DNA of 64,000 bases, from contig NW_027266280.1 in the NCBI RefSeq assembly GCF_022045235.1, positions 372,001 to 436,000 on the forward strand. The letters are read 5' to 3'. Under the pieces are notes generated by a model. It was not told the DNA's origin and ran no database searches. It worked only from the letters and a program-made list of their open reading frames with translations. This document shows, one piece after another, positions 1-26,074 of this stretch; the first letter of the stretch is position 1; the number at the start of each line of letters is the position of its first letter. Source of the stretch: Haliotis cracherodii (taxonomy: Eukaryota). Made by a program: the position numbers and the translations under genes.

Positions 1-2692
1 TATAATATGATACAAGAAAAGTTAAACTTGGAAAATATTGAATGTTATTTTTCTTCATGTTCATATTCACATACTATACAAATACTTGGTTTACATGTCT
101 TAATTTTGTTCTTAAATAGTTGTGATGTATATTATATATCTCCTACCTTCAGCTGTTACATCATTGTCATCTTACATGCTTCACCTCAGCTCTATCATGA
201 GTTTTTGCATGACAATGACTTCTTACTAACATGCATATTATAAACCACAGAAAATCTCTATGAAAAATAAAATGTATACTGCAAGCATTGCATCTAACTG
301 CACAAAACATCCTTAATGTTCCACCATTTGTGTGATGCAAACGTATCCACGCCGGCAAGAGGTAAGCTAAAGACAGTGTTGATGTTTCTATGATTAAAGG
401 CAAGGGGATGTCGGAGATGTTCACACATGTATTTCGTCATTTATAAGTTTTTTTTCTCTTTTTCCAATGCCTTTCACTCACTGAAATCATAGCTATCTGG
501 CATGTTGACTAAGGTAATATTTCTGATCATTGTACAACTCAGACTTTTATATGCCGATCATCTTCGTCACGGTTCATCAGTCAAGTCTCTGTTAAACTCA
601 AGTTATGTTGCATGCATCCAATGATATTACAAATGTTCCTGTATTTTTGTCACATGTAAACGCTGTGTGCTCAGTATTCTGACTCTGTGGAGAGATATAA
701 AGAGATATTTTCCACTCTAGACTTGTTGGTTTGTTTTTAAAAGCAATACTGCTGTAACAGTTTGGCTTCCTAGACGATAGGCGGTGATGGGTTTGTAGAT
801 GAGTCAAGTCGGGTGCACGAACACTTAGTAAACACATGTGAATCAACAATATGGTGATCAAGTACCATTACAGTGTATGCTCGATGAAAACTAAAATTGA
901 TATACAGTCTTGAATTCATGCATAACATATATCTTCTCACTAACAATAAGGTATTCCATGGCTTTTTATTTTGATGTTTTTTTATCTGTCATGAATTATT
1001 ATTCAGATTGTTTGATTCTTTCGTTATTGAATGTCCATTTTATGCTGTCAAAATAGCATCATTTCAAATACAAGTATTGTGATAAAAAGTTTGTATCAGT
1101 CATACTTGGGAAAAACAGCCCATGATTTCCATGTAATTGTCTCAGTTATTGTATGATCCTTATTTTTTCCAAGCAACACGGAAAATACATCATTGTAAAT
1201 TTTGATTTTCTATAATTTGTATTTCATGGAGTCAGCTCTTAATAAAACCAAACAATTCTATGAGAAGCCTAACTTCCTGACAGACAGAATCAATGAATGT
1301 CATAACAACTCCGATACAAACATCAGTAGCTCTGTTGTAACTGAAGATCAGAACATTTGTAGAACAGTAGTTACTGGGTGGATTATCTTTTCCTAGTTCA
1401 ACTGTTCTCCACTAGGGGATTGATGGAAGGAGCTGCCATTTTGTTTTGGGGCACAAATCTACAAAGTACCTTTTCTAACTGACTCAAATACTCATTTAGT
1501 TGTTTTATTTTATTGTTAAAAGTAAATTGTAAGATGTGTGAACGTGAAAGGCAGTTGAACTTGGATGAGGTATTTCCTTGGAGAGTTAACGGTAGTGAGA
1601 AGTGTGGGTGACATACTGGTGACCTAGCTACCATGCCGTCTATACATGTACATCTCAATACGGTGTGCCTCCTTTTTTGAATGCCCCCTCTGCTTTTGAT
1701 GTAAGAGATAAGGTAAGACAGAAATATATGTATCTGTTGTTTTCTTCCCTTCACTTCGTTGTGTCTCAAACCCAGTTTGGATAAACTCTAACAAACAAAA
1801 ATGCATAATTTGTGGCAGTTTTAGACAATTAATCACATCCGTCGCTGTCAAGAATAGCAGACGATGTTTACAATTAACTGCTGCTGTTACAGTAAATCTC
1901 TTTCTATTCCAGTGTGTTATATTGGAATTCGGGATTGGGGATGGTGATAGGTATTTTGCTACAATATCCATAGAACAGTGTTGGACATATTTTCAAATAT
2001 TTAAATTCCTTCCAGTGGAAGAATAGTGCTTGTCTGGAATCGTTCTTACCTGGTATGGATTATCCTCGATCAGCATTTTTCTATGGACAGAATTTCTGTG
2101 TAGATATATCAGCACTAATTTCTCCAAGTCCAGATACATCAGTCTGGCATTGCATGGTTTTCTTGTTGTAAATTATATCCAGTAATGGCTCTAGATGGCC
2201 ACCATTGATTCAAGACACATCTGGCAAACATTGACAAGTCAGGTTGCCATGGGAATTGCATCTATTGTAGATTGGTAGTGTTAAATCAACAAGCTTGCTA
2301 CATAAAGATCATATAGCCAGCTAGTCACACATCTCTCAAGCATGCTTTCTGTAACCAAGGCTTTGTTCAAGATTGACCAGATACACGTCAGCTTGACGGC
2401 ATTTATCTGCTTACTGTAAATACATCAATCTTAATTATGTGCTTGTCCAGATCCGCTTGAGAATACATTGCAGCCCTGGACATGAATAATATACTAATAT
2501 TAAAGTTGACCTTACTAATTGCATGTATTGATAGAACAGTGTAGTTGACTAACTGGACTTTGGTTTTGACCACAAGGGAAGGTAACCCTGATTTGTGAGT
2601 GTTTGTCTTCCTGGCACTGTGTTTGGTTACGTACAGGGCCCACAGGCTTTCAAGCAGGAGCACTGTCTCATTTGATTATCTTTCTTTTTCAG

Positions 2693-2737
2693 CTCTGAAT
2701 CTAAGAAAAATAAGAAAAGTAAAAGACGGCGAAAAAG
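2693..2737 (+). CDS. Srrm234: Srrm234 internal exon (45 nt, SESKKNKKSKRRRKR)
   Basis: tttctttttcag acceptor, AAG|gtaagc donor, phase 2-2, basic NLS-like peptide. Confidence 0.82.
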
Positions 2738-5700
2738 GTAAGCTTGGTTGCAAGTTCAGAGTGAGTGCTTTGCCCAGACATGTATCGTGGCAGTCTAGTG
2801 CCTTGCTTCTAAATGCAAGGGGGATATAGGAATCGGTGCTGTCCGTCTGTCAGGTTTTCATATAACTGAACTCTTGAAATCATCATTCAGCCAATTCACT
2901 CACAAATACCCTTNNNNNNNNNNNNNNNNNNNNNNNNNNNNNNNNNNNNNNNNNNNNNNNNNNNNNNNNNNNNNNNNNNNNNNNNNNNNNNNNNNNNNNN
3001 NNNNNNNNNNNNNNNNNNNNNNNNNNNNNNNNNNNNNNNNNNNNNNNNNNNNNNNNNNNNNNNNNNNNNNNNNNNNNNNNNNNNNNNNNNNNNNNNNNNN
3101 NNNNNNNNNNNNNNNNNNNNNNNNNNNCCACCAAGTCGGTGTGTTTCCAAATGTGTATATCTGACATTATCCACTGAGTGGGTCTATGTAGAGAGATAAG
3201 CAGGTAATTGTTACAAGAGTGTATATATATAATGTTATCCACTGAGTGGGTCTATGTAGAGAGATAAGCAGGTAATTGTTACAAGAGTGTATATATAATG
3301 TTATCCACTGAGTGGGTCTATGTAGAGAGATAAGCAGGTAATTGTTACAAGAGTGTATATATAATGTTTTCCACTGAGTGGGTGTATGTAGAGAGATTAG
3401 CAGGTGACTGTATTTTACAGGAGTGAAGAAAAGAAGAAGCGGAGGAGAAGGAAAGAGTCATCCAGCTCAGACTCAGACTCAGATTCGGACTCGGAATCGG
3501 ACTCAGGAAGGTGGGTTCTTGGACACAACAGAGTTGAGGAAGGTTCTGGGAATAAATTATGGAATCTGAGTACAATCAGTCAGGGGACTCACTGTGTACC
3601 CACCATGTTCCTATTGGTTCACTGTAAGACCAGCCCACCCTGTTCCTATTGGTTCATTGTAAGACCAGCCCACCATGGGGAGGCCAGGGCAGAAATGGTC
3701 TCCAGTCACGTGTGTGCTGGTCACAAAAGGGTCACAGCTGCACCAGTGGACCATCAGACTCAATGACTGAGTATCATGTCACATTCAAACCCTGATGTAG
3801 TCTCATGACATGTTTGAAAAGACAAGCCCACTCTGACAGCCTGCATCCCAGCAGGGATATATTACGGTTTATTTCTCCCCTGACCTAAAAGGGTAGTGGT
3901 ATATAGTTGTGCCCAGGAAATCCTTCCATCTATCCGTCCGTCCGAGGACATTTTGTATGTGACCTATAACTTGAAGTGTACTGCATAGATTCTTTTCAAA
4001 CTTTGTGAACATTTCTACATCAATAAGAGAGCTTCAGTGCGAAGTTTCATTTCAATATTTACATTATCTGAAACAAATACCGCTATTTTAAATATTTTTA
4101 TTTCAACATTTGTTTGAACTATAACTCGAGAACTACTTCCTGGATGTGCACTTTCTTTACTTATATGAGAGGTGCAGTGAAAAGTTTGATTTCAATCAAT
4201 TTCACTCAATATAAGTGGATTTGCTGAGAAAATTTTCATAATTTGTAAAGGGCAAAGCATGTTGATGATGCTCCAGTGCATCTGTCAATCATGCTAACCT
4301 TAGGGTATATTACTGTACTTTAAGAAAAAACGGCTCAAACATTAAGCCATCAATGTCTTGAAAATCAGAATTGTTCAGCTGATGTTTGAGTCAAGGTTGG
4401 GGGGTATTAGTGAGTCCTGCTGACCTTTTGCCTTGTTAATATTTGTTTTATTCTGTTCTTTTTGTAGTTTGTGTTTAATGTCATAAATTGAATATTGGGG
4501 TAACCTTTCATTTTTCGTTGGATATTGAACCCGAAAGGAATGATTAACTTCTGATTTTCTGATTACTTTGAGTTTTCTCTTTCTGATAAATCTTAAGTAA
4601 CCTGTAATCTTATGTCTGTATCTACAAGTCTGTGGGGCGCCGGTGGCCGTCGTCCAAGTCGTCCGAGTAGTTGTCATTCTTTGTTGTGTCCTTTGGGCAC
4701 ACCTTAAACCTGTCATTATTGGTTCGAATCCCGGTTCGTCCTGATTGTGTTTTTAGGTTTGTCAGCACCATACCCATGCTCGTGGGTTTCACCAAAGTGG
4801 TATCCGTCTCTAACCCGCATCACATTAAACTTCACTCCCACATTATGCTGACACGCCATGACATAGGAGGAAAAGTGTTCAGAGCAGCATTATACCTACC
4901 TCACTCACTCACTCACTCACTCACTCACTCACACTCTCGCTCACTCACACTCTCGGTCGCTCACTCANNNNNNNNNNNNNNNNNNNNNNNNNNNNNNNNN
5001 NNNNNNNNNNNNNNNNNNNNNNNNNNNNNNNNNNNNNNNNNNNNNNNNNNNNNNNNNNNNNNNNNNNNNNNNNNNNNNNNNNNNNNNNNNNNNNNNNNNN
5101 NCTCACACACTCTCNNNNNNNNNNNNNNNNNNNNNNNNNNNNNNNNNNNNNNNNNNNNNNNNNNNNNNNNNNNNNNNNNNNNNNNNNNNNNNNNNNNNNN
5201 NNNNNNNNNNNNNNNNNNNNNNNNNNNNNNNNNNNNNNNNNNTCACACACTCCCGCTCACTCACACACTCTCGCTCACTCACACTCACTCACACACTCGC
5301 TTGCTCACCTCACACTCACTCTCACACACACTCACTCACTCACTCACTCCTCACTTGCTCACTCACACTCACTTGCTCACTCACACACTCGCTCACTCAT
5401 GCACTCTCAATCACTCACTCACTCTCTCTCACTCACTCACTCAATNNNNNNNNNNNNNNNNNNNNNNNNNNNNNNNNNNNNNNNNNNNNNNNNNNNNNNN
5501 NNNNNNNNNNNNNNNNNNNNNNNNNNNNNNNNNNNNNNNNNNNNNNNNNNNNNNNNNNNNNNNNNNNNNNNNNNNNNNNNNNNNNNNNNNNNNNNNNNNN
5601 NNNNNNNNNNNNNNNNNNNNNNNNNNACACTCCCGCTCACTGACTCACGCTCGCTCACACACAGACTCTCGCTCACTCACACTCACTCTCACTCACACAC

Positions 5701-8700
5701 TCGCTTGCTCACCTCACACTTACTCTCACACACACACTCACTCACTCACTCACTCACTCACTCACTCCTTCTCACTTGCTCACTCACACTCACTTGCTCA
5801 CACACACTCTCGCTCACTCATGCACTCTCACTCACTCACTCACTCCTTCTCACTTGCTCACTCATGCACTCTCATTCACTCACACACTCTCGCTCACTCA
5901 TGCACTCTCATTCACTCACTCACACACTCTCGCTCACACACTCACTCACACACTCTCGCTCACTCATATTCAGAGTCTCATAAGTTCTTTTTGTTCACCA
6001 GGAAATGTGGAAAAGTTTTTTGCGGCTGTTTACACAGATATTTCATTTGTCTTGATTGATGTGGTTGTCATTCAACACAACGTGGAAACAGTTTCTAGAT
6101 AAACAACAACTAAATCTTCTGTATTTAATCACATCATTTCGAGGTATTGAGAAGATGAAAAACAAATAAAATAACAATTTAAAACATGCTTTTTTTTAGA
6201 GATATTGTAGGAGACTGGACAGTCACATGACGTGGTGAACCACTAATGACAAGGGAAAGAATAAATATTTCTCATTTTTCAGATTTTGTGTTGTTGAAAT
6301 TTGGTTGCGCTGAAAACACCCAGTCTAACATGTGCACAAGTTCTTACAGAGTTGTCCTGTTTCGCAATCGTTCAGTATACTGAATAATGTATTATTAAGT
6401 GACAATTACATTTGTACACTTGATGTTGGAAGATAATTGATTTCCGATATTGACTGTAGGTAGTATTGATCAGCATGTTGTCATTGGAATTCCACATAGA
6501 ATAGGGTTATCTGGTGGCCGCCTTAGAATTCCAAATATGAACACTGCAGATGCGAGTCCCATGGTGCAGGGGTGGTTGGCTAGCCTCGTGGTTAAAGCAT
6601 TCGCTCGTCACACTGAAGACCCAGGTTCGATTCCCTACATGATTACAATGTATGAAGCCAATTTCTGATGTCCCCGCTGTGATGTTGCTGATATATTGCT
6701 AAAAGTGGCGTCAAATAAAAACTCACTCACTCACTCACTCACTCACTCACTCACTCACTCACTCACTCAGCCTTCCGTTAGTCTTGGTTGTTCAGCCAGC
6801 AGTACAAGGGAAACAAAGGCGTAACATGATTATGATGTAAAGATGTTTGAAAACAATGAAGGACAAAGACATGCATGTATAGGCAGCTCCCTATGTTTGT
6901 TTTATGATGAGTCCTGATTCCACCTTCTACAGGAAAGCATGTATAACCAGTTCCAATGTATTTTCACCATTTTCCAAGGACTTTTGTTTGACCATGCCCT
7001 TGTTGACTGGAATCTTATATGACCTTGACCTTGTTGGCTGGAAGGTTGTGTAACTTTTGACCTGAATGTTATATGACCTTGACCTTTTCCTTGTTACAGT
7101 TCCTCCTCGGCAGCTTCCCCCGACAGAAATGGAAAGACAAGGAAGTCCTCCCATCACTCACCCTCCCCAGCTAAACCCCCTGCTGACAGGGTTTGCCCCC
7201 CAGAGCACCGACCTTCCCCTGCATCCAGATCAAAGAGAGCCAATTCGGAATCGGAATCGGACAAATCCCCTCCAAGGTAGGAACAGTCTTCCTCAAAGAT
7301 TTGTCTGTGTAGTGAATCATAAAACCTTTGCCTACAAAATTTGACAAATGATATTTAGTTAAATATCCTAAATTGAATCTGTTTTGAGAGTAGGACTTGA
7401 AAGTTTATTATATTTGTGAATATTTATTATATTTGCATGAAAATTTTAGCAGTTCAGATTTCTGATTTGTAACGTCTTGTCATTTTGTTATTAGCTGAAA
7501 ACTATTTTGTTGATGTGACTTGTGCTTGGGAAACTTACTATCTTCCTGTCAACAGATCAGCAAGACAAAATGGGCACGCTAACACCAAGTCAGGAGACAA
7601 CAAGCCCAGAAATGGCAAGACAAGCCCTTCACCGAAAAGAAATCGAAGCAAGTCTTTGAGCTACTCTCCTGCTGACCGACGACGGGGAAAGTCGTCACCG
7701 TACAAAACCAAATGCAGCAAAGAATCCTCAAGAGGTCGGTCTCCCAAACATGGAGAGAAGAGGCGACACTCCAGGTCCACATCCAGGTCACCTTCAAAGC
7801 AGAAGAAGAGGTCACCAGTGAAGAGGTCAAGGAGAAGTTCAAGGTCGCCTACCAATTCTCGGTCACGATCGAGATCCTATTCCAGATCCAGAAGTCGTTC
7901 CAGAAAGAGGTATGACAAAGTTCTGATTGTTTGCTTTCATAATATCTATGCATTATCTTGGTATAGACTTTGTAATTGTGAGCAAATGCACCAGTGCATA
8001 TATTCTAAAACTTGTTGTTAGGTCCAAATGTTTACTTGGAAGATAGTCTTTTGTGTTAGTAAAAAGATCTATTGACACACTTAGTTCTATAGGAAATATT
8101 TCTCTGATAGTTTTTTACTTTTATGTTTCCTTTCTACTCAGACTATAATTTCCCCGATGTCAAACTTTGTGACACTTGAGATGGCTTGTTCCCAGTGCTT
8201 GTCACGGCCATAAACTCAATGACGAGCAGTTGGCAGCAAGGGCTGCTGGGACTATGAATTGTGGGAAGTATGACCACACATGTCCTTCTGTCAGCTGTGA
8301 TCATTGATAACACTATCAACCACTAGTTGTCTGTGCCTTGTATTCCTGGGCATGAATGTCCATGAATGTCCATGAGTGATGTTGAATGTTGATTAATGTT
8401 GATGAATTACTGAATCCAGGGAAAGGAGCTACTCCCATTCTCGATCTCACAGTCGAAGACGGTCGTACAGTCGCAGCCCAAGCCATGACTCTCGGCGCCG
8501 AGAATCACGCAGCCCTTCGATCCGGAGAAGGAAAGGCTCACCGAGTCACTTAGATAAACGCCGGATAACAAGGTGGGGGGTCCTCCATACAGATCCATGT
8601 CAGACACAGTGTCAGAGAGAAATAAATGAAGAATTTCCTTTACACAAGTGCCATTAGTTTGTCCATGTATTCATTTTTCTAGCACCTTTCACCATCTGAT

Positions 8701-11700
8701 GTGGGAAGGTCAGCTCATTCCTTACAGTGATGTGTATTCAGTGTTGTGCCACATGTCACACATCGGAGTCAGTATCAATAAATGCACCTCTGTAGTTTCT
8801 ACACTTTGATTGCTTCTGTTTTACTCTCATTTGGTTTTGTATAAAGTTACAATCTTCTTTTGGGTGTTGTAATCCTCTGTCCTAGCATGTTGTTTTATTT
8901 CCACCTTCTTTTATTTTTGGTTTTGTTTTTCTTGCTGTTTGGTGTCTAGGTCGAGATCCAGAGAACGGAAGTATGATGACCGACGTCGATCCCGGTCACG
9001 ATCATACAACCGGCGATGCTCCCCTTCTCCATATTATCGTTCCAGTAAACGTCCACGAGACAGATACTAAGAATGAAGAAGCTCAAGCCACAACATGGTA
9101 TTCATTGTTCGCAGTTGGCTTGCAGAGTTTCTACTACTAATGCCTAACACAACCTACTAACCCCTGCTGTCAGACAGGATGAGGGTTGATGGGAAGCCAT
9201 GTGTCTGATGTATGGCAGTTTGAGATGAGCCCCAATAGCTGATAACTTGAGAATGAGTGGATTAGTTTAGTAACTCTGGAACGCTGAGTGATGTGGTTGT
9301 GACATTGACACTAACAGAGTGGAAGCATCGGCAGATGTGTGTGAAGCTGAAGTGGATGATTACTGTTACACTTGTGCATGCATTATATATTTCTGAAAAC
9401 GTGTGATTTGAGTTTGTTTGGAGGCACAGGAAAGTGCTTTTATTATCCCAACCTGGCTTCCACAGGAGATAGTGCTTGGGTGAGATCCTGGCAGATATTG
9501 CTACAAAGAAACTGCAGCACAATGCCGTGCAGACCATTGTGATGTCATTGGTTATCATGACATCACAATCAAATGACATCACTAATCCCACTTCCACTAA
9601 CGCTAGTCAGCTGTACCTTGTACACTAGATAAACTGGTTATTAATTTTTACAAACTAAAAAAAGTGTATTGACATGATTGCAATGGATACATGGAATACA
9701 GCACTAACATTGGAGTACACTATTCCAGTGTATTACGTCATCAGCTAAATAATCAGTCCACACTATTCCAGTGTATTACGTCATCAGCTAAATAATCAGT
9801 CCGCACTATTCCAGTGTATTACGTCATCAGCTAAATAATCAGTCCACACTATTCCAGTGTATTACGTCATCAGCTAAATAATCAGTCCGCACTATTCCAG
9901 TGTATTACGTCATCAGCTAAATAATCAGTCCGCACTATTCCAGTGTATTACGTCATCAGCTAAATAATCAGTCCACACTATTCCAGTGTATTACGTCATC
10001 AGCTAAATAATCAGTCCGCACTATTCCAGTGTATTACGTCATCAGCTAAATAATCAGTCCGCACTATTCCAGTGTATTACGTCATCAGCTAAATAATCAG
10101 TCCGCACTATTCCAGTGTATTACGTCATCAGCTAAATAATCAGTCCGCACTATTCCAGTGTATTACGTCATCAGCTAAATAATCAGTCCACACTATTCCA
10201 GTGTATTACGTCATCCGCTAAATAATCAGTCCACACTATTCCAGTGTATTACGTCATCAGCTAAATAATCAGTCCGCACTATTCCAGTGTATTACGTCAT
10301 CAGCTAAATAATCAGTCCACACTATTCCAGTGTATTATGTCATCAGCTAAATAATCAGTCAGCTCTATTCCAGTGTATTACGTCATCAGCTAAATAATCA
10401 GTCCGCACTATTCCAGTGTATTACGTCATCAGCTAAATAATCAGTCAGCTCTATTCCAGTGTATAACCTCACCCTGTAAATAATCAAGACCAGGAAAACC
10501 AGTGACTAGAAACAGGCAAAGCCCCACACCATTGGCAGCCTTGAGATTATCTGTTGTATCAGACTCTGGGGACCCTGACTATTTAGTCCTCAGGGCCATG
10601 ACACGGACAGATGTTCATGGCCTATTTGGGCCTGATTTCAAAGACTGTTCACTGATGTACATCAGTTATTCCCGAAAGTTTTGTTAGATTCACTGCACTG
10701 TTCTCTGGTGTTCAACAAGTATACAAGGTTTTAGGTGATGCACAAGTGTAGGGATTGGACGCAGAAAAAGAATATACTGCGTCATTTATGGGTGTCTGTT
10801 ATTTCATCCATCAATCACGACCACTATCCACATGCTTATTGATTCATTTCAGGCTCTAAAGTAATTATCTAAACATACAGTACTCTACACCATTACATTA
10901 CCATACAGGGCCCTCATATTGCCTGTGCAATAATTAATTGGGCATGTCATCGTATCCCAAATGCGTGGATTGAAGCTCATGCTGTCAATCACTTGATTGT
11001 CTGGTCCAGACTCCATTATTTACAGACCGCCGTCTTATAGCTGAAATTTTGCTGAGTGCAACATTAAACAAACAAACAAACATGTTTACAACCATTGGAT
11101 CATTCTTGCTGAACCATGTGGCTAACGCAGCTTCAGCATCATGTTTTGCGTGCTGCGTGATGTTTCTTGCTGCGTGATGTTTCTTGCTGCGTGATGTTTC
11201 TTGCTGTGTGATGTTATTTTGCTGCATGATATTATTTTGCTGCATGATATTATTTTGCTGGTATATTTGGTGTTGGATGTTGATAGTCGCACCATCTGCG
11301 ACATAATCTAGATTGTGTTTCTTGCTGTGTTTAACAGTCCGTAACTCAGGCAGTTTAATGCCACACAAGACATTTGCTATCTCAAACACTAGTTTCTCTC
11401 GCTAACATTTTATATAGGAGTTATTTTACTGAAAGTGCTGACTGTCCTACCAGAGATTGAATAATGTTTTTTGGTTAAGGCCACACGTTTTGTATTGTTT
11501 GTTTCATGGACAGCAACCCCTACTGAAAAACAGCTGGAAAAGAAATAAATTAAACATAAACAAATTCATTTTTTATTATGTCTCTGCTAGAATGATAGAT
11601 CCTCTTATACAATATAAAATATTATACAAATTTCATGTCTTCATCTCTATTCAAACTTCAAGAAGCCAACTGCAGTTTGAACTCCACTGCAGAATGACTT

Positions 11701-12244
11701 TCATGTAATTAAATAAATGCTTGACATCGCTATTTATTTTGATTTTGATTTTGACTGACCTTGTGTGGAAAACTGGAATAAATATGTGAAGAAAAAATTA
11801 TGAAAGTGTGGCCCAGTTTCTTTCTTTCTCTATTGAGTGTCTATCAACATCATGAAAATAGACTTAGTTTTCTTGAGTATGTGTAAAATTGCAAATATTA
11901 CCGGTACTATCGATATGTAATGTTTACAAATTTGATATTACAATAATTGCTGACTTTGCCAGTGATGTGTGACAAAGAAGCTGAAGTGGATGAAAGTCAT
12001 TTCTGAAAGAAATTGCTGTCAGTGTTTAACAAATAATTTGTCTTTCCTTTCCAGTGCAAGAAAACGACCAGTCCCCTACTACAGGCCCTCTCCCCCCTCC
12101 CCCAGCTCCGACGACAGCTATAGGTCATACTCCAGGTCAAGGTCAAGGTCGCGTTTCCGTAGTCGTAGTCTGAGTCTAACAAAGCGCTACTCTAGGCGGC
12201 GGCGTAGCTGGAGCAGCTGCAGTCTTGACAGTCTGAAACACTGA
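2693..12244 (+). CDS. Srrm234: Srrm234 (SRRM2/3/4-family SR-related splicing factor), 3' part; eMIC-containing isoform: join(2693-2737,3421-3510,7100-7276,7556-7909,8420-8572,12055-12244); 5' exons lie upstream of the window or in N gaps
   Basis: All exons are bounded by AG/GT and all introns are phase 2. The spliced frame is open and K/R/S/RS-rich and reads ...SPSIRRRKGSPSHLDKRRITS|ARKRPVPYYRPSPPSPSS..., matching the SRRM3/SRRM4 C-terminal eMIC motif. Confidence 0.9.
3166..3405. repeat. ~66-70-bp tandem repeat x3.5 abutting the 3421 acceptor
   Basis: tccactgagtgggtctatgtagagagataagcaggtaattgttacaagagtgtatata repeated. Confidence 0.9.
3421..3510 (+). CDS. Srrm234: Srrm234 internal exon (90 nt, SEEKKKRRRRKESSSSDSDSDSDSESDSG)
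   Basis: tattttacag acceptor, AAG|gtgggt donor, phase 2-2. Confidence 0.85.
4900..5967. repeat. Degenerate (ACTC)n/(AC)n microsatellite with N gaps
   Basis: Direct inspection. Confidence 0.95.
6569..6768 (+). mobile_element. tRNA-derived SINE (family 1) with (ACTC)n tail
   Basis: Box A tagcctcgtgg, box B ggttcgattcc, GTC anticodon-like loop; repeated at 30348, 38839, 58719. Confidence 0.85.
7100..7276 (+). CDS. Srrm234: Srrm234 internal exon (177 nt, SSSAASPDRNGKTRKSS...SESESDKSPPR)
   Basis: ttgttacag acceptor, AAG|gtagga donor, phase 2-2, S/P/R-rich open frame. Confidence 0.82.
7556..7909 (+). CDS. Srrm234: Srrm234 internal RS-rich exon (354 nt)
   Basis: cctgtcaacag acceptor, GAG|gtatga donor; lies within ORF 7485-8021 (RSRSRSYSRSRSRSRKR). 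Confidence 0.88.
8420..8572 (+). CDS. Srrm234: Srrm234 penultimate exon (153 nt) encoding the N-terminal half of eMIC (…GSPSHLDKRRIT)
   Basis: atccag acceptor, AAG|gtgggg donor, phase 2-2. Confidence 0.9.
8950..9070 (+). CDS. Srrm234: Srrm234 proximal alternative last exon, coding part (RSRSRERKYDDRRRSRSRSYNRRCSPSPYYRSSKRPRDRY*), eMIC-minus isoform
   Basis: Long U-rich tract ~8890-8940 then tctag acceptor; phase-2 compatible with the 8572 donor; RS-rich, ends in TAA. Confidence 0.82.
9718..10464. repeat. 43-bp minisatellite x~17
   Basis: cactattccagtgtattacgtcatcagctaaataatcagtccr. Confidence 0.97.
10938..11082 (+). mobile_element. SINE-like family 2, 5'-truncated
   Basis: catgtcatcgtatcccaa..gtctggtccagactc..aaacaaacaaac. 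Confidence 0.75.
11704..11755 (+). promoter_or_regulatory. Candidate proximal poly(A) site of Srrm234
   Basis: TGTA ~11705, AATAAA 11712-11717, downstream U-rich tatttattttgattttgattttg; other AATAAA hexamers nearby (~11544, ~11777). Confidence 0.45.
12055..12244 (+). CDS. Srrm234: Srrm234 distal alternative last exon, coding part (SARKRPVPYYRPSP…LDSLKH*), eMIC-plus isoform
   Basis: tctttcctttccag acceptor; AG|T gives Ser and completes RRITSARKRPVPYYRPSP; TGA at 12242-12244. Confidence 0.9.
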
Positions 12245-13269
12245 GAAATATCACAAGTTGTAGACACCTTCTCAAATCCCGAGGGGATCACGGCTGGCCC
12301 AGTCGTCTTAGCTGCAGTGATTCACTGTGCAGAGTTGCGTCCTTTGGGCACACCAGAAACCAATGATTGTGGTCAGCATCATGCTTGTGGGTTTCACCGA
12401 AGTGGTAAACGTCTAAGACTTGCATCACTTCCTGCCACATCAAGCTGACACGCCGTGATAAAACTGGAATACTGTTAACAGCAGGGTTAAACCCAAATAT
12501 CTCACTCACCGACTCACTCACATCCCAAGCTTTTGTTTCAAAAATGTCAAAATGCCTGCCTCTGTAAGAAGGTCTTAGGCATCTATATCTAGGAATATCG
12601 AACAAATATTGAAGTTCCTGGAACAGTTAGAGTACCGTCTGTCTGTGATTCCTCCCTGCCGGGACATCTCCTCAGTGTCAGGGTGCAACTTGTGATATTT
12701 CTTGGCTGACCCAACTTTATTTGGTGCAATCGCGATATGGCTGCAATATTGCCGATGCGATGTAAAATTAAACTCACTCAATTATTTGGTGCAATACATC
12801 CCAGTGCCCAAACAGCTGTTTTACCTGTGGTAGGGACATTCCCACATGTCTCCTGGAGGTGCTCAGTCGGTCTTAACACTGTACATAACATTTCTACAAC
12901 ACTGGACGGCACAGTTGGATTGAAGACGAGCCGGCTTATCCAAGAGACATGTTGGATCGGTCTGTAGTGCGGCAGTTTGAGCGCTGGGGAGAGGAGAGTT
13001 TATGACGATGATGTCATGGCAGGCTACTCGACCTGGCTGGTTTAACATATCAGATTTAAGTTATTGTTCGTTCGGACTGGTCTTTCATTTTACATGTATT
13101 TATTTATATGCTATTTATTGCACATGTTGTGGCTTTTGCAACAGTTGTTGGTTTTATTTTCGGTTTTATAAAGATATTTGTTTTATGACTCAACTATGCT
13201 GGACCAATTAGAGTTATTTCCCCTTGATTAGAGTTGGCTGGAGTAGCATGAAATGAAACAAACATTGTG

Positions 13270-14524
13270 TTGGTGTAGGTGAAGATTACTGGCAGTCAAT
13301 AGCATCCCATGCTTGGTTTGTACCGGGTGTGCGAGTTGGTGTAGGTGAAGATTACTGGCAGTGAATAGCATCCCATGCTTCGTTTGTACTGGGTGTGCGA
13401 GTTGGTGTAGGTGAAGATTACTGGCAGTGAATAGCATCCCATGCTTCGTTTGTACCGGTTGTGCGAGTTGGTGTAGGTGAAGATTACTGGCAGTGAATAG
13501 CATCCCATGCTTCGTTTGTACTGGGTGTGCGAGTTGGTGTAGGTGAAGATTACTGGCAGTGAATAGCATCCCATGCTTGGTTTGTACTGGGTGTGCGAGT
13601 TGGTGTAGGTGAAGATTACTGGCAGTCAATAGCATCCCATGCTTCGTTTGTACTGGGTGTGCGAGTTGGTGTAGGTGAAGATTACTGGCAGTCAATAGCA
13701 TCCCATGCTTGGTTTGTACCAGGTGTGCGAGTTGGTGTAGGTGAAGATTACTGCCAGTGAATAGCATCCCATGCTTCGTTTGTACTGGGTGTGCGAGTTG
13801 GTGTAGGTGAAGATTACTGGCAGTGAATAGCATCCCATGCTTCGTTTGTACTGGGTGTGCGAGTTGGTGTAGGTGAAGATTACTGGCAGTCAATAGCATC
13901 CCATGCTTGGTTTGTACCAGGTGTGCGAGTTGGTGTAGGTGAAGATTACTGCCAGTGAATAGCATCCCATGCTTGGGTTGTACCGGGTGTGCGAGTTGGT
14001 GTAGGTGAAGATTACTGGCAGTGAATAGCATCCCATGCTTCGTTTGTACCGGGTGTGCGAGTTGGTGTAGGTGAAGATTACTGCCAGTGAATAGCATCCC
14101 ATGCTTGGGTTGTACCGGGTGTGCGAGTTGGTGTAGGTGAAGATTACTGCCAGTCAATAGCATCCCATGCTTGGTTTGTACCGGGTGTGCGAGTTGGTGT
14201 AGGTGAAGATTACTGCCAGTGAATAGCATCCCATGCTTGGTTTGTACCAGGTGTGCGAGTTGGTGTAGGTGAAGATTACTGCCAGTGAATAGCATCCCAT
14301 GCTTGGTTTGTACCGGGTGTGCGAGTTGGTGTAGGTGAAGATTACTGCCAGTGAATAGCATCCCATGCTTGGTTTGTACCAGGTGTGCGAGTTGGTGTAG
14401 GTGAAGATTACTGGCAGTCAATAGCATCCCATGCTTGGTTTGTACCAGGTGTGCGAGTTGGTGTAGGTGAAGATTACTGCCAGTCAATAGGATCCCATGC
14501 TTGGTTTGTACCGGGTGTGCGAGT
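13270..14524. repeat. 66-bp minisatellite x~19
   Basis: ttggtgtaggtgaagattactggcagtgaatagcatcccatgcttggtttgtaccgggtgtgcgag. Confidence 0.97.
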
Positions 14525-18827: not shown

Positions 18828-21800
18828 TTTAAACCTAGTGTCTGGCGCTGTAGTGAGAACAGGAATAAAACTTGTGTTTGGCACCATGGTGAGGTGAGTA
18901 AACCTAGTGTTTGGCACCATGGTGAAAGGCAGAGTAAACCTAGTGTCTGGCACCATGGTGAGAGGGGAAGTAAACCTAGTGTCTGGCGCCATGGTAAGAA
19001 GGGAGTAAACCTAGTGTCTGGCACCATGGTGAGAGGTGAAGTAAACCTAGTGTCTGGCGCCATGGTGAGAAGGGAGTAAACCTAGGGTCTGGCGCCATGA
19101 TGAGAGGGGAAGTAAACCTAGTGTCTGGCGCCTTGGTGAGAGGGGAAGTAAACCTAGTGTCTGGCGCCATGGTGAGAGAGGAAGTAAACCTAGTGTCTGG
19201 CGCCATGGTGAGAAGGGAGTAAACCTAGTGTCTGGCACCATGGTGAGAGGGGAATTAAACCTATCTTCTGGCGCCATGGTGAGAAGGGAGTAAACCTAGT
19301 CTCTGGCACCATGGTGAGAGGGGAAGTAAACCTAGTGTCTGGCACCATGGTGAGAGAGGAAGTAAACCTAGTGTCTGGCGCCATGGTGAGAAGGGAGTAA
19401 ACCTAGTGTCTGGCACCATGGTGAGAGGGGAATTAAACCTATCTTCTGGTGAGAAGGGAGTAAACCTAGTCTCTGGCACCATGGTGAGAGGGGAAGTAAA
19501 CCTAGTGTCTGGCACCATGGTGAGAGGGGAGTAAACCTAGTGTCTGGCGCCATGGTGAGAAGAGAGTAAACCTTGTGTCTGGCACCATGGTGAGAAGGGA
19601 GTACACCAAGTGTCTGGCGCCATGGTGAGAGGGGAAGTAACCCTAGTGTCTGGCGCCATGGTGAGAAGGGAGTAAACCTTGTGTCTGGTGCCATGGTGAG
19701 AAGGGAGTAAACCTTGTGTCTGGTGCCATGGTGAGAGGGGGAGTTAATATTGTATCTGGCGCCATGGTGAGAGGGGGAACAAACCTAGTGTCTGGCGCCA
19801 TGGTGAGAGGGGCAGTAAACCTAGTGTCTGGTGCCATGGTGAGAGGGGGAGTAAACCTAGTGTCTGGCGCCATGGTGAGAGGGGAAGTAAACCTTGTGAC
19901 TGGCACCATGGTGAGAGGGGGAATAAATCTTGTGTCTGGCACCATGGTGAGAGGGGGAGTAAACCTTGTGCCTGGCACCATGGTGAGAAGGGGAGTAAAC
20001 CTTGTGACTGGCACCATGGTGAGAGGGGGAGTAAACCTTGTGCCTGGCACCATGGTGAGAAGGGGAGTAAACCTTGTGACTGGCACCATGGTGAGAGGGG
20101 GAGTAAACCTTGTGTCTGGTGCCATGGTGAGAGGGGGAGTAAACCTTGTGTCTGGTGCCATGGTGAGAGGGGGAGTAAACCTAGTGTCTGGCGCCATGGT
20201 GAGAGGGGAAGTAAACCTTGTGACTGGCACCATGGTGAGAGGGGGAATAAATCTTGTGTCTGGCACCATGGTGAGAGGGGGAGTAAACCTTGTGCCTGGC
20301 ACCATGGTGAGAAGGGGAGTAAACCTTGTGACTGGCACCATGGTGAGAGGGGGAGTAAACCTTGTGCCTGGCACCATGGTGAGAAGGGGAGTAAACCTTG
20401 TGACTGGCACCATGGTGAGAGGGGGAGTAAACCTTGTGCCTGGCACCATGGTGAGAAGGGGAGTAAACCTTGTGACTGGCACCATGGTGAGAGGGGGAGT
20501 AAACCTTGTGTCTGGTGCCATGGTGAGAGGGGGAGTAAACCTTGTGTCTGGCACCATGGTGAGAGGGGAATTAAACCTTGTGACTGGCACCATGGTGAGA
20601 GGGGAAGTAAACCTTGTGTCTGGCGCCATGGTGAGAGGGGAAATAAACCTTGTGACTGGCACCATGGTGAGAGGGGGAGTAAACCTTGTGTCTGGCACCA
20701 TGGTGAGAGGGGAAGTAAACCTAGTGTATGGCGCCATGGTGAGGAGTGAAGTAAACCTAGTGTCTGGCGCCATGGTGAGAGGGGGAGTAAACCCTGTGTC
20801 TGGCGCCATGGTGAGAGGGGGAGTAAACCCTGTGTCTTGCGCCATGGTGAGAGGGGGAGTAAACCTAGTGTCTGGCACCATGGTGAGAGGGGAAGTAAAC
20901 CTTCTGACTGGCACCATGGTGAGAGGGGGAGTAAACCTTGTGTCTGGCACCATGGTGAGAGGGGAAGTAAACCTAGTGTCTGGCGCCATGGTGAGGAGGG
21001 AAGTAAACCTAGTGTCTGGCGCCATGGTGAGAGGGGGAGTAAACCCTGTGTCTGGCGCCATGGTGAGAGGGGGAGTAAACCCTGTGTCTTGCGCCATGGT
21101 GAGAGGGGGAGTAAACCTAGTGTCTGGCGCCATGGTGAGAGGGGGAGTAAACCTAGTGTCTGGCACCATGGTGAGAGGGGGAGTTAACCTAGTGTCTGGC
21201 ACCATGGTGAGAGGGGGAGTAAACCCTGTGTCTGGCGGCATGGTCAAAGGGGGAGTAAACCCTGTGTCTGGCGGCATGGTAAGAGGGGGAGTAAACCTAG
21301 TGTCTGGCGCCATGGTGAGAGGGGAAGTAAACCTTGTGACTGGCACCATGGTTAGAGGGGGAGTAAACCTAGTGTCTGGCACCATGGTGAGAGGGGGAGT
21401 AAACCTTGTGTCTGGCACCATGGTTAGAGGGGGAGTAAACCTTGTGTCTGGCACCATGGTGAGAGGGGAAGTAAACCTAGTGTCTGGCACGATTGTGAGG
21501 GGGGTAAACCTAGTGTTTGGCACCATGGTGAAAGGCAGAGTAAACCTAGTGTCTGGCACCATGGTGAGAGGGGAAGTAAACCTAGTGTCTGGCGCCATGG
21601 TAAGAAGGGAGTAAACCTAGTGTCTGGCACCATGGTGAGAGGTGAAGTAAACCTAGTGTCTGGCGCCATGGTGAGAAGGGAGTAAACCTAGGGTCTGGCG
21701 CCATGATGAGAGGGGAAGTAAACCTAGTGTCTGGCGCCTTGGTGAGAGGGGAAGTAAACCTAGTGTCTGGCGCCATGGTGAGAGAGGAAGTAAACCTAGT

Positions 21801-24800
21801 GTCTGGCGCCATGGTGAGAAGGGAGTAAACCTAGTGTCTGGCACCATGGTGAGAGGGGAATTAAACCTATCTTCTGGCGCCATGGTGAGAAGGGAGTAAA
21901 CCTAGTCTCTGGCACCATGGTGAGAGGGGAAGTAAACCTAGTGTCTGGCACCATGGTGAGAGAGGAAGTAAACCTAGTGTCTGGCGCCATGGTGAGAAGG
22001 GAGTAAACCTAGTGTCTGGCACCATGGTGAGAGGGGAATTAAACCTATCCTCTGGTGAGAAGGGAGTAAACCTAGTCTCTGGCACCATGGTGAGAGGGGA
22101 AGTAAACCTAGTGTCTGGCACCATGGTGAGAGGGGAGTAAACCTAGTGTCTGGCGCCATGGTGAGAAGAGAGTAAACCTTGTGTCTGGCACCATGGTGAG
22201 AAGGGAGTACACCAAGTGTCTGGCGCCATGGTGAGAGGGGAAGTAAACCTAGTGTCTGGCGCCATGGTGAGAAGGGAGTAAACCTTGTGTCTGGTGCCAT
22301 GGTGAGAAGGGAGTAAACCTTGTGTCTGGTGCCATGGTGAGAGGGGGAGTTAATATTGTATCTGGCGCCATGGTGAGAGGGGGAACAAACCTAGTGTCTG
22401 GCGCCATGGTGAGAGGGGAAGTAAACCTAGTGTCTGGTGCCATGGTGAGAGGGGGAGTAAACCTAGTGTCTGGCGCCATGGTGAGAGGGGAAGTAAACCT
22501 TGTGACTGGCACCATGGTGAGAGGGGGGATAAATCTTGTGTCTGGCACCATGGTGAGAGGGGGAGTAAACCTTGTGCCTGGCACCATGGTGAGAAGGGGA
22601 GTAAACCTTGTGACTGGCACCATGGTGAGAGGGGGAGTAAACCTTGTGCCTGGCACCATGGTGAGAAGGGGAGTAAACCTTGTGACTGGCACCATGGTGA
22701 GAGGGGGAGTAAACCTTGTGTCTGGTGCCATGGTGAGAGGGGGAGTAAACCTTGTGTCTGGCACCATGGTGAGAGGGGAATTAAACCTTGTGACTGGCAC
22801 CATGGTGAGAGGGGAAGTAAACCTTGTGTCTGGCGCCATGGTGAGAGGGGAAATAAACCTTGTGACTGGCACCATGGTGAGAGGGGGAGTAAACCTTGTG
22901 TCTGGCACCATGGTGAGAGGGGAAGTAAACCTAGTGTATGGCGCCATGGTGAGGAGGGAAGTAAACCTAGTGTCTGGCGCCATGGTGAGAGGGGGAGTAA
23001 ACCCTGTGTCTGGCGCCATGGTGAGAGGGGGAGTAAACCCTGTGTCTTGCGCCATGGTGAGAGGGGGAGTAAACCTAGTGTCTGGCACCATGGTGAGAGG
23101 GGAAGTAAACCTTCTGACTGGCACCATGGTGAGAGGGGAAGTAAACCTAGTGTATGGCGCCATGGTGAGGAGGGAAGTAAACCTAGTGTCTGGCGCCATG
23201 GTGAGAGGGGGAGTAAACCCTGTGTCTGGCGCCATGGTGAGAGGGGGAGTAAACCCTGTGTCTTGCGCCATGGTGAGAGGGGGAGTAAACCTAGTGTCTG
23301 GCGCCATAGTGAGAGGGGGAGTAAACCCTGTGTCTGGCGCCATGGTGAGAGGGGGAGTAAACCTAGTGTCTGGCACCATGGTGAGAGGGGGAGTTAACCT
23401 AGTGTCTGGCACCATGGTGAGAGGGGGAGTAAACCCTGTGTCTGGCGGCATGGTAAGAGGGGGAGTAAACCTATTGTCTGGAGCCATGGTGAGAGGGGAA
23501 GTAAACCTTGTGACTGGCACCATGGTTAGAGGGGGAGTAAACCTAGTGTCTGGCACCATGGTGAGAGGGGGAGTAAACCTTGTGTCTGGCACCATGGTTA
23601 GAGGGGGAGTAAACCTTGTGTCTGGCACCATGGTGAGAGGGGAAGTAAACCTAGTGTCTGGCACGATTGTGAGGGGGGTAAACCTAGTGTCTGGCGCCAT
23701 GGTGAGAGGGGGAGTAATCCTAGTGTCTGGCGCCATGGTGAGAGGGGGAGTAATCCTTGTGTCTGGCGCCATGGTGAGAGGGGGAGTAAACTTTGTGCCT
23801 GGCACGATGGTGAGAGGGGGAGTAAACCTTGTGCCTGGCACCATGGTGAGAGGGGGAGTAAACCTAGTATCTGGCACCATGGTGAGAGGGGGGTAAACCT
23901 AGTGTCTTGCACCATGGTGAGAGGGGGAGTAAATCTAGTGTCTGGCACCATGGTGAGAGGGGAGTAAACCTTGTGTCTGGCACCATGGTGAGAGGGGGAG
24001 TAAACCTTGTGTCTGGCACCATGGTGAGAGGGGGAGTAAACCTTGTGTCTGGCGGCATGGTGAGAGGGGGAGTAAACCTAGTGTCTGGCACGATTGTGAG
24101 GGGGGTAAACCTAGTGTCTGGCGCCATGGTGAGAGGGGGAGTAATCCTAGTGTCTGGCGCCATGGTGAGAGGGGGAGTAATCCTTGTGTCTGGCACCATG
24201 GTGAGAGGGGGAGTAAACCTAGTGTCTGGCATGATTGTGAGGGGGATAAACCTAGTGTCTGGCGCCATGGTGAGAGGGGGAGTAATCCTAGTGTCTGGCA
24301 CGATTGTGAGGGGGGTAAACCTAGTGTCTGGCACCATGGTGAGAGGGGGAGTAAACCTAGTGTCTGGCACGATTGTGAGGGGGGTAAACCTAGTGCCTGG
24401 CGCCATGGTGAGAGGGGGAGTAAACCTTGTGTCTGGCACCATGGTGAGAGGGGGAGTAAACCTAGTGTCTGGCACCATGGTGAGAGGGGGAGTAAACCTA
24501 GTGTCTGGCACCATGGTGAGAGGGGGAGTAAACCTAGTGTCTGGCACCATGGTGAGAGGGGGAGTAAACCTAGTGTCTGACACCATGTTGAGAGGGGAGT
24601 AAACCTAGTGTCTGGCACCATGGTGAGAGGGGGAGTAAACCTAGTGTCTGGCACCATGGTGAGAGGGGGAGTAAAACTAGTGTCTGGCACCATGGTGAGA
24701 GGGGGAGTAAACCTAGTGTCTGGCAGGATGGTGAGAAGGGAGTAAACCTAGTGTCTGGCACCATGTTGAGAGGGGGAGTAAACCTTGTGTCTGGCACCAT

Positions 24801-25620
24801 GGTGAGAGGGGGAGTAAACCTTCTGTCTGGCACGATTGTGAGGGAGGTTAACCTTGTGTCTGGCACCATGGTGAGAGGGGGAGTAAACCTAATGTCTGGC
24901 TCCATGGTGAGAGGGGGGTAAACCTTGTGTCTGGCACCATGGTGAGAGGGGGGTAAACCTAGTGTCTGGCACCATGGTGAGAGGGGGGTAAACCTAATGT
25001 CTGGCACCATGGTGAGAGGGGGGTAAACTTTGTGTCTGGCACCATGGTGAGAGGGGGAGTAAACCTAATGTCTGGCACCATGATGAGAGGGGGGTAAACC
25101 TTGTGTCTGGCACCATGGTGAGAAGGGGGTAAACCTTGTGTCTGGCACCATGGTGAGAGGGGGGTAAACCTAGTGTCTGGCACCATGGTGAGAGGGGGGG
25201 TAAACCTTGTGTCTGGCACCATGGTGAGAGGGGGAGTAAACCTTGTGTCTGGCACCATGGTGAGAGGGGGAGTAAACCTAGTGTCTGGCACCATGGTGAG
25301 AGGGGGAGTAAACCTAATGTCTGGCACCATGGTGAGAGGGGGAGTAAACCTAGTGTCTGGCACCATGGTTAGAGGGGGAGTAAACCTAGTGTCTGGCACC
25401 ATGGTTAGAGGGGGAGTAAACCTTGTGTCTGGCACCATGGTGAGAAGGGGGTAAACCTTGTGTCTGGCACCATGGTGAGAGGGGGGTAAACCTAGTGTCT
25501 AGCACCATGGTGAGAGGGGGGGGTAAACCTAGTGTCTGGCACGATTGTGAGAGGGGTAAACCTAGTGTCTGGCACGATTGTGAGGGGGGTAAACCTAGTG
25601 TCTGGCGCCATGGTGAGGGG
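18828..25620. repeat. 36-bp (33-36) minisatellite, ~6.8 kb, with a 2606-bp higher-order duplication
   Basis: gtaaacctagtgtctggcaccatggtgagaggggga; identical variant series recur at an offset of 2606. Confidence 0.98.
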
Positions 25621-26074
25621 GAAGAACTTAAGCTGGTGCAGGAAGAGCACAACTACATGGACGAAGAAAATAACTCAATGACAAAAATAAAAACATACCC
25701 GACATATATATTTTGCTCACAGGTGTATATTTGGGTCAACCAATATGTAAAATCTTTGTGGCTGTAAACTTTATTCAGTGCAAACAGAGCATAACATTTC
25801 ATCCAATATATTGTAGCAAAACATGAAAATAACAATTAACATTTTTGTACAGGGAGCAAGTGCACATGAGAAAGGTAAATACTGTCAAAGACACACATGT
25901 GACAATTCTCTTCAATGTTTGCCTTGAACTCAGTGTGTGATAACAACATGCAGAGCAAGTGATATTATTTGTTTGCTTGTTTGTTTGTTGTTTAAGAGAA
26001 CACTCAGCAATATTTCAGCATTATGACGGCAGTCTTGGGGACACTTACTCAGCTTGCTGATTTTACTTGCTCAA

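What the first reader, a model, noticed from the sequence alone, without database searches (positions are those of the whole stretch)
8420..12244. Split eMIC domain switched by alternative last exons: a neural microexon master switch in a probable mollusc
Seen: exon 8420-8572 ends mid-motif (…SPSHLDKRRIT-AG) and can join in frame to either of two stop-containing exons. Joining 8950 gives RSRSRERKYDD…RDRY* with no eMIC. Joining 12055 gives SARKRPVPYYRPSP…*, completing eMIC. Known: the eMIC domain of SRRM3/SRRM4 drives neural microexon inclusion, and in invertebrates it is produced from the single Srrm234 gene by alternative 3'-end processing (studied in amphioxus and Drosophila). Inference: this locus shows the full on/off switch in a lophotrochozoan-like genome. 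It predicts a neuron-specific distal isoform and a neural microexon programme. The junction is invisible in the ORF track.
Basis: partly seen in the sequence, partly recalled or inferred. Interest (0 to 1): 0.85.

Follow-up and report, generated by a model that had tools for sequence, protein, structure and literature searches.

The report
Abalone Srrm234 eMIC alternative last exons
This is the 3' end of the single Srrm234 splicing-factor gene of an abalone-like mollusc. One shared exon can join either a proximal terminal exon without the microexon-enhancer (eMIC) domain or a distal one that completes it, an arrangement already published for flies and already annotated in a sister abalone.

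Summary
Exon 8420-8572 has an AG acceptor and a GT donor and ends 2 bases into a codon after ...HLDKRRIT. It joins in frame to 8950-9070 (RS-rich tail, stop TAA) or to 12055-12244 (stop TGA).

- **Domain split:** Pfam SRRM_C (eMIC) is split exactly at this junction. The shared exon covers profile positions 5-55 (30.3 bits, above the cut-off) and the distal exon covers 57-67.
- **One gene:** The genome has one such locus. It lies colinear with a cwf21 domain 96 kb upstream, giving one ~100.5-kb Srrm234 gene.
- **Relatives:** RefSeq models of Haliotis asinina carry both endings (X1/X2 with eMIC, X3/X4 with the proximal tail). They are 87-96% identical to the window's exons. Aplysia also has both kinds of ending.
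- **Prior literature:** Papers on Drosophila describe the same shared-donor, alternative-last-exon switch and call it the ancestral non-vertebrate state.

Verdict: a real, well-formed, expected orthologue. It is a new member of a known kind, of modest interest. The scan has not reported it on other DNA.

The parts
2691..2738 (+). Upstream Srrm234 coding exon (approximate limits), K/R/S-rich
   Evidence: the frame-2 translation matches residues ~227-240 of the H. asinina protein, which tblastn had missed. Splice sites were not delimited.
3419..3508 (+). Upstream Srrm234 coding exon (approximate limits)
   Evidence: tblastn of P0006/P0001, 90% identity over 30 aa.
7100..7276 (+). Upstream Srrm234 coding exon
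   Evidence: One search shows the AG acceptor and GT donor. tblastn gives 77% identity to H. asinina residues 263-320.
7556..7909 (+). RS-rich Srrm234 coding exon; ends with 2 bases of a codon that base 8420 completes
   Evidence: cag|atc ... gag|gtatga. tblastn gives 79% identity over 124 aa.
8420..8572 (+). Shared exon holding the first part of the eMIC domain; common donor at 8572|GT
   Evidence: Pfam SRRM_C 30.3 bits, profile 5-55/67. 96% identical to H. asinina.
8890..8949 (+). Long U-rich polypyrimidine tract and acceptor of the proximal exon. It is one of only two U-rich clusters in 8400-12400 and is a candidate site for a repressor of proximal-exon use (inference).
8950..9070 (+). Proximal stop-containing exon: non-eMIC RS-rich tail of 40 residues, stop TAA 9068-9070. 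The 3' limit and poly(A) site are unknown.
   Evidence: 34 of 39 residues match the C-terminus of H. asinina isoforms X3/X4. No Pfam hit.
12055..12244 (+). Distal terminal coding exon that completes eMIC (S-ARKRPVPYYRPSP...), stop TGA 12242-12244
   Evidence: Pfam SRRM_C profile 57-67. ~95% identical to the C-terminus of H. asinina X1/X2, with one 2-residue indel.
12767..12772 (+). First canonical-type poly(A) hexamer (ATTAAA) after the distal stop, 523 nt downstream; candidate distal 3' end
   Evidence: Sequence only, no 3'-end data.
11063..11782 (+). First ATTAAA/AATAAA hexamers after the proximal stop (11063, 11544, 11549, 11708, 11712, 11777). These are candidate ends of a 2-2.7 kb proximal 3' UTR, if the proximal exon is a true terminal exon.
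   Evidence: None lies between 9071 and 11062.

Best explanation
The window holds the last seven or so exons of the single Srrm234 (SRRM2/3/4-type) gene of a Haliotis-like gastropod. The gene spans ~100.5 kb, starting at G000:C17:283731 with a cwf21 domain. Exon 8420-8572 encodes the first part of the eMIC (Pfam SRRM_C) domain and provides one donor. Splicing to 12055 yields the protein with a complete C-terminal eMIC. Splicing to 8950 yields a protein that ends in a 40-residue RS-rich tail without the invariant ARKRPVPYYRPSP core. This is the same shared-donor alternative-last-exon switch described for Drosophila Srrm234. By analogy, the proximal form would be the general SRRM2-like splicing factor. 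The distal form would be made in neurons, where eMIC recruits U2AF and SF1 to microexons. Shown here: the exon anatomy, the domain split, single copy, and both isoform classes in relatives. Inferred: tissue specificity, eMIC activity, and the factor that suppresses the proximal exon (probably an ELAV-type protein acting on U-rich sequence).
For: The splice sites and frames are read directly. SRRM_C is split at the junction: profile positions 5-55 in the shared exon at 30.3 bits and 57-67 in the distal exon. There is only one SRRM_C locus in the 1.18-Gb genome. A cwf21 domain lies on the same strand 96 kb upstream, and H. asinina isoform X1 maps colinearly over the whole span at 77-100% identity per exon. 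H. asinina RefSeq isoforms X1/X2 end with the distal-exon peptide and X3/X4 with the proximal-exon peptide. The two window exons tile onto the invariant RRIT|SARKRP[VI]PY.RPSP core of mollusc, arthropod and vertebrate SRRM3/SRRM4 proteins. Aplysia isoform X5 and a Candidula model also leave the same RRIT point for a non-eMIC RS tail. For the mechanism in Drosophila and its stated generality in non-vertebrates, see PMC8797185 and PMC10551640.
Against: There are no reads, so neither junction was seen in RNA of this species and no tissue bias was measured. The H. asinina isoforms are computed models whose transcript support I could not inspect. Full-length H. asinina X2 scores only 23.1 bits on SRRM_C, under the 27-bit cut-off, although the exon alone passes it (30.3) and the oyster protein does too (35.4). 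No canonical poly(A) hexamer lies within 2 kb of the proximal stop, so whether 8950 starts a true terminal exon is open. The proximal tail has no detectable homologue outside Haliotis (within the tool's length limits).
Confidence: 0.85

Rival explanations
1. The proximal exon is not a terminal exon with its own poly(A) site. It is an internal stop-carrying ('poison') cassette that is spliced on to 12055, so the off-state transcript shares the distal 3' end and may be degraded by NMD. This resembles Drosophila isoform G.
For: There is no AATAAA or ATTAAA for 1,993 nt after the proximal stop. Drosophila uses its proximal exon both ways (PMC8797185).
Against: No donor scores better than 6 of 9 consensus positions within 430 nt after the stop. 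Protein models cannot tell the two forms apart.
Confidence: 0.2
2. Both isoforms exist but the choice is not neural. The eMIC form would be broadly or constitutively expressed in abalone, and the proximal form would be a minor or developmental variant.
For: Three of four H. asinina protein accessions groups, and most annotated mollusc proteins found, carry eMIC. That could reflect abundance, or only the sampling of tissues.
Against: Published work states neural restriction by post-transcriptional processing for non-vertebrates in general (PMC8797185; PMC10551640). Ectopic eMIC is harmful in flies according to the same paper.
Confidence: 0.15
3. The proximal 'exon' is a chance RS-rich open frame picked up by gene prediction, and the gene has one real ending (eMIC).
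For: Open frames of 40 or more codons after an AG are common in this interval, 26 of 230. The peptide has no Pfam hit and no homologue beyond Haliotis.
Against: The peptide is 87% identical to H. asinina, more than the neighbouring RS exons (77-79%). It has the strongest polypyrimidine tract in the interval. It is the only other RS-rich frame there. Aplysia and Candidula have an analogous non-eMIC ending from the same donor.
Confidence: 0.05

Closest known systems
Drosophila melanogaster Srrm234 (CG7971) 3'-end switch (Torres-Mendez et al. 2022, PMC8797185)
   Same: It is a single pre-duplication gene with an N-terminal cwf21 domain. The first eMIC-encoding exon supplies a common donor. A proximal stop-containing non-eMIC exon competes with a distal exon that completes eMIC.
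   Different: The fly has three acceptors and defined poly(A) sites pA1 and pA2, with Elav/Fne dependence shown. Here there are two candidate acceptors, the poly(A) sites are unknown, and regulation is untested. The abalone protein is short (about 530-565 aa).
Haliotis asinina 'serine/arginine repetitive matrix protein 2-like' isoforms X1-X4 (XP_067651357.1, XP_067651386.1, XP_067651412.1, XP_067651420.1)
   Same: This is the orthologous gene. X1/X2 end with the distal-exon peptide and X3/X4 with the proximal-exon peptide, and every window exon maps colinearly.
   Different: It is a different species: identity is 77-79% in the RS exons, 87% in the proximal tail, and ~95-96% in the eMIC exons with a 2-residue indel. 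RefSeq names it SRRM2-like and does not flag eMIC.
Vertebrate SRRM4 (nSR100) and SRRM3
   Same: They share the invariant RRITSARKRP[VI]PY.RPSP core and the C-terminal position of the SRRM_C/eMIC domain.
   Different: In vertebrates eMIC is constitutive in separate, transcriptionally neural genes. Here it is optional in one gene that also makes the SRRM2-like form.
Aplysia californica SRRM isoforms X1/X2/X4 (eMIC) and X5 (non-eMIC)
   Same: Both classes branch at the same point after RRIT.
   Different: The non-eMIC tail of Aplysia (and of Candidula) ends ...RRGH[FY] and is not alignable with confidence to the Haliotis tail. The Aplysia eMIC isoforms carry a long Q-rich extension.

Membership tests
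eMIC / Pfam SRRM_C (PF15230) of SRRM3, SRRM4, Srrm234 | Match to the SRRM_C profile at or above the curated cut-off (27 bits) | tested here: met
The shared exon alone scores 30.3 bits on profile 5-55/67, and the distal exon covers 57-67 at 12.9 bits. Caveat: full-length H. asinina X2 scores 23.1 bits over 6-67, while the oyster orthologue scores 35.4.
eMIC / Pfam SRRM_C (PF15230) of SRRM3, SRRM4, Srrm234 | Invariant core RRITSARKRP[VI]PY.RPSP shared with vertebrate SRRM3/4 | tested here: met
   The two window exons, aligned as separate rows, tile this core without a gap. The exon boundary falls after RRIT. 276 proteins were hit at E<=0.001, including bird, fish, amphibian and monotreme SRRM4 and fish SRRM3.
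eMIC / Pfam SRRM_C (PF15230) of SRRM3, SRRM4, Srrm234 | Promotes microexon inclusion; binds U2AF1/2 and SF1 | not testable with these tools
   This needs a cell assay. The function is taken from PMC8797185.
Non-vertebrate single-copy Srrm234 | One gene with an N-terminal cwf21 domain and a C-terminal eMIC | tested here: met
   cwf21 lies at C17:283899-283970 on the + strand. H. asinina X1 maps colinearly from C17:283731 to 384241. The genome has a single two-part SRRM_C locus.
Srrm234 alternative-last-exon switch (Drosophila type) | [quoted passage not shown] | tested here: met
   The anatomy is read from sequence. Both products are present as H. asinina and Aplysia isoforms. No reads were available from this species.
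Srrm234 alternative-last-exon switch (Drosophila type) | Proximal exon has its own poly(A) site | tested here: inconclusive
   There is no AATAAA or ATTAAA between 9071 and 11062. Only weak variants occur at 9628 and 9695, and canonical hexamers at 11063-11777.
Srrm234 alternative-last-exon switch (Drosophila type) | Distal (eMIC) isoform restricted to neurons; ELAV-family dependence | not testable with these tools

The most novel reading that the evidence does not exclude
The two arms of the switch may evolve at very different rates in gastropods. The eMIC arm is almost invariant from abalone to vertebrates. The 'off' arm appears to have been replaced or rewritten: the Haliotis proximal tail has no detectable relative outside the genus, whereas Aplysia and Candidula share a different ...RRGH[FY] tail. 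In abalone the proximal exon may also lack a nearby poly(A) site and run as a ~2-2.7 kb 3' UTR ending just before the distal acceptor. The decision would then be a direct contest between splicing to 12055 and cleavage upstream of it. This would make abalone a simple two-acceptor model for how the ancestral switch is wired.
Probability: 0.25. Interest if true: 0.35.

Novelty: new member of a known kind. Interest (0 to 1): 0.25.

Why it matters
It confirms, in a vetigastropod genome, the arrangement proposed as the ancestral bilaterian way of confining eMIC activity to neurons. It gives exact coordinates for the two junctions that an RNA-seq test needs. Public annotation calls these proteins 'SRRM2-like' and sometimes truncates them at the RRIT donor: an annelid model ends ...RRITR. 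The locus therefore shows how the eMIC exon can be missed. It opens no new question, because the concept is published and both isoforms are already modelled in a congener.

Tried and rejected
- **Relative's DNA:** I therefore could not compare H. asinina DNA, intron conservation or poly(A) sites.
- Exons were searched one by one by reference, and natural database isoforms stood in for the joined product.
- **Key paper:** the 2019 paper that defined eMIC (Nat Ecol Evol 3:691) is not held. What it shows for molluscs is unverified here. My recollection that it sampled an octopus is memory only.
- **Literature:** searches for eMIC or microexons together with molluscs found nothing relevant.
- **PDB:** the sequence search with the shared exon returned no match, as expected for a disordered RS domain.
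- **Irrelevant call:** the bacterial promoter/terminator scan does not apply to this animal gene.
- **Proximal tail:** the search found only H. asinina itself. The tool sees only proteins of 293-933 aa, so the blank is weak evidence.
- **Duplication idea:** I considered that the proximal exon arose by duplication of the distal one, since both hold SPSP, YYR and KRP. I dropped it because the motifs are in a different order and the composition is low-complexity.
- **Third SRRM_C hit:** the hit on C1:73431490 (18.2 bits, below the cut-off) was taken as RS-rich noise and not followed.
Full report
**Observation.**
- **Shared exon:** 8420-8572 is preceded by AG (8418-8419) and followed by GT (8573-8574). 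Read from 8421 it gives 50 codons ending ...GSPSHLDKRRIT, with two bases (AG) left over.
- **Proximal exon:** an acceptor AG at 8948-8949 sits behind a long U-rich tract. From 8950 the frame continues for 40 residues of RS-rich sequence to TAA at 9068-9070.
- **Distal exon:** a second acceptor AG lies at 12053-12054. From 12055 the frame reads S-ARKRPVPYYRPSP... for 63 residues to TGA at 12242-12244.
- **Upstream link:** exon 7556-7909 ends with two bases of a codon that base 8420 completes, so the chain is in frame.

**Is this more than chance?** An open in-frame continuation alone is not. Of 230 AG sites between 8580 and 12500, 26 give 40 or more open codons. Three properties single out these two exons. 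They are the only RS-rich frames (0.56-0.60 R+S). Both have pyrimidine-rich acceptors (0.74). Both match real proteins of relatives, as shown below.

**What the exons encode.** Each was searched by reference.
- Pfam SRRM_C (PF15230), the family that corresponds to the eMIC region, matches the shared exon at 30.3 bits (cut-off 27) over profile positions 5-55 of 67.
- It matches the first 11 residues of the distal exon over positions 57-67.
- The proximal exon matches nothing.

The domain is therefore cut at exactly the 8572 donor, and only the distal exon completes it.

**Gene context.**
- A six-frame scan of the whole genome (1.18 Gb, 80 contigs; the window is C17:372001-436000) finds this as the only locus with both halves of SRRM_C.
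- A cwf21 domain lies on the same strand at C17:283899-283970, 96 kb upstream.
- I fetched the 92 kb between that point and the window and mapped a full-length relative onto it. The protein maps colinearly from the start codon at C17:283731 to the distal exon at C17:384241.
- One further short exon lies at window ~2691-2738.

This is one ~100.5-kb gene with the Srrm234 architecture: cwf21 at the N-terminus, RS-rich middle, eMIC at the C-terminus.

**Relatives in Haliotis.** A full HMMER pass with the shared exon over 1.84 billion representatives returned five proteins.
- The best (96% identity) is XP_067651420.1, 'serine/arginine repetitive matrix protein 2-like isoform X4' of Haliotis asinina. 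It is 533 aa and ends after RRIT with the proximal-exon peptide.
- A word-indexed search from that protein found isoform X2 (558 aa). It ends after RRIT with the distal-exon peptide.
- The cluster look-up shows four H. asinina isoforms. X1 and X2 carry eMIC; X3 and X4 carry the proximal tail. Each pair differs by an optional 8-residue insert far upstream.

| Region | Identity to the window |
|---|---|
| cwf21 exons | 98-100% |
| Mid-gene exon 3419-3508 | 90% |
| RS exons 7100-7276 and 7556-7909 | 77-79% |
| Shared exon | 96% |
| Proximal tail | 34 of 39 residues (87%) |
| Distal exon | ~95%, with one 2-residue indel |

The window therefore comes from an abalone or a very close relative, but not from H. 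asinina itself. The proximal tail is better conserved than the neighbouring RS exons, which argues that it is a real coding exon.

**Wider comparison.** The eMIC part of isoform X2 finds 276 proteins at E<=0.001.
- Molluscs: oyster, Solemya, mussel, Aplysia and Lymnaea Srrm234-type proteins.
- Arthropods: several proteins.
- Vertebrates: many SRRM4 and SRRM3 proteins.

In an alignment where the two window exons are kept as separate rows, they tile the invariant core RRIT|SARKRP[VI]PY.RPSP. The exon boundary falls after RRIT. Several genomic ORF calls and an annelid model end ...RRITR. That is what a read-through of an AG|GT donor at this point would give, so the intron position looks old.

Aplysia isoform X5 and a Candidula model also leave the RRIT point for a non-eMIC RS tail ending ...RRGH[FY]. 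The Haliotis proximal tail itself found no relative outside the genus (within that tool's length limits).

**Mechanism.** Torres-Mendez et al. 2022 (PMC8797185) describe the following for Drosophila Srrm234:
- a proximal non-eMIC exon used either as a terminal exon with its own poly(A) site or as a poison exon;
- a distal exon that completes eMIC;
- the choice set in neurons by Elav/Fne.

The same paper states that neural eMIC expression comes from post-transcriptional processing of Srrm234 in non-vertebrates. A review calls the multi-isoform single gene the ancestral bilaterian state (PMC10551640). The abalone locus fits this plan with two acceptors.

Shown here are the anatomy, the domain split, single copy, and both isoform classes in relatives. 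Inferred are three things:
- the distal form is neuronal;
- it enhances microexon inclusion through U2AF and SF1;
- a U-rich-binding factor suppresses the proximal exon. U-rich motifs in 8400-12400 are confined to 8800-8999, just upstream of the proximal exon, and to 11400-11599.

**Open point: the proximal 3' end.** No AATAAA or ATTAAA lies between the proximal stop and 11063. A cluster of such hexamers sits at 11544-11777, just before the distal acceptor. No good donor follows the proximal stop. There are two possibilities:
- the proximal exon carries a 2-2.7 kb 3' UTR;
- it uses a non-canonical signal, or is sometimes a cassette.

After the distal stop the first hexamer is ATTAAA at 12767.

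**What could not be done.**
- The 2019 paper that defined eMIC is not held.
- Masked N runs at 2914-3127, 4968-5101, 5115-5242 and 5446-5626 were left alone.

**Verdict.** The functional prediction is reasonable but untested. It is not new in kind. It is the expected orthologue of a published switch, and both products are already modelled in RefSeq for a congener and for Aplysia. I rate it a new member of a known kind, with interest 0.25.

Noticed in passing
window 8573-8782: AATAAA hexamers at 8621 and 8777 lie just inside the intron after the shared exon. Reading through the 8572 donor gives 28 more codons and a stop at 8655-8657. This could give a truncated third isoform by intronic polyadenylation. 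No database isoform supports it.
   Followed up: partly
window 9718-10486: A 43-bp unit repeated 17.9 times (96% matches) sits between the proximal and distal terminal exons. Its role, if any, is unknown.
   Followed up: no
window 13269-64000: The rest of the window is crowded with tandem arrays, for example 66 bp x19 at 13269-14524, 36 bp x191 at 18830-25621 and 82 bp x39 at 47763-50921. The long ORFs there are repeat translations. No gene was looked for.
   Followed up: no
window 445-520: The first-stage note s1-826411 (candidate 21-nt poison microexon) lies in the Srrm234 intron between the exon at C17:369840-369911 and the exon at window ~2691-2738. The 21-nt segment has AG and GT flanks and in-frame stops. 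It is absent from all four H. asinina isoforms.
   Followed up: partly
G000:C17:369800-369911 (outside the window): H. asinina isoforms X1 and X3 carry an optional 8-residue insert (RKKHRDGC) just before the exon that maps to C17:369840-369911. This suggests a second, independent alternative event in the gene.
   Followed up: no
G000:C67:27320300-27320413 (L005): A second cwf21 match (29.4 bits, profile 10-44) lies on another contig, so the genome has another cwf21-domain gene besides Srrm234.
   Followed up: no
P0016, P0140 (database proteins): The annelid Paralvinella palmiformis model ends ...HLDKRRITR, and one Mytilus edulis model runs on from RRIT into unrelated sequence. Gene predictions often read through this donor and miss the eMIC exon.
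   Followed up: no
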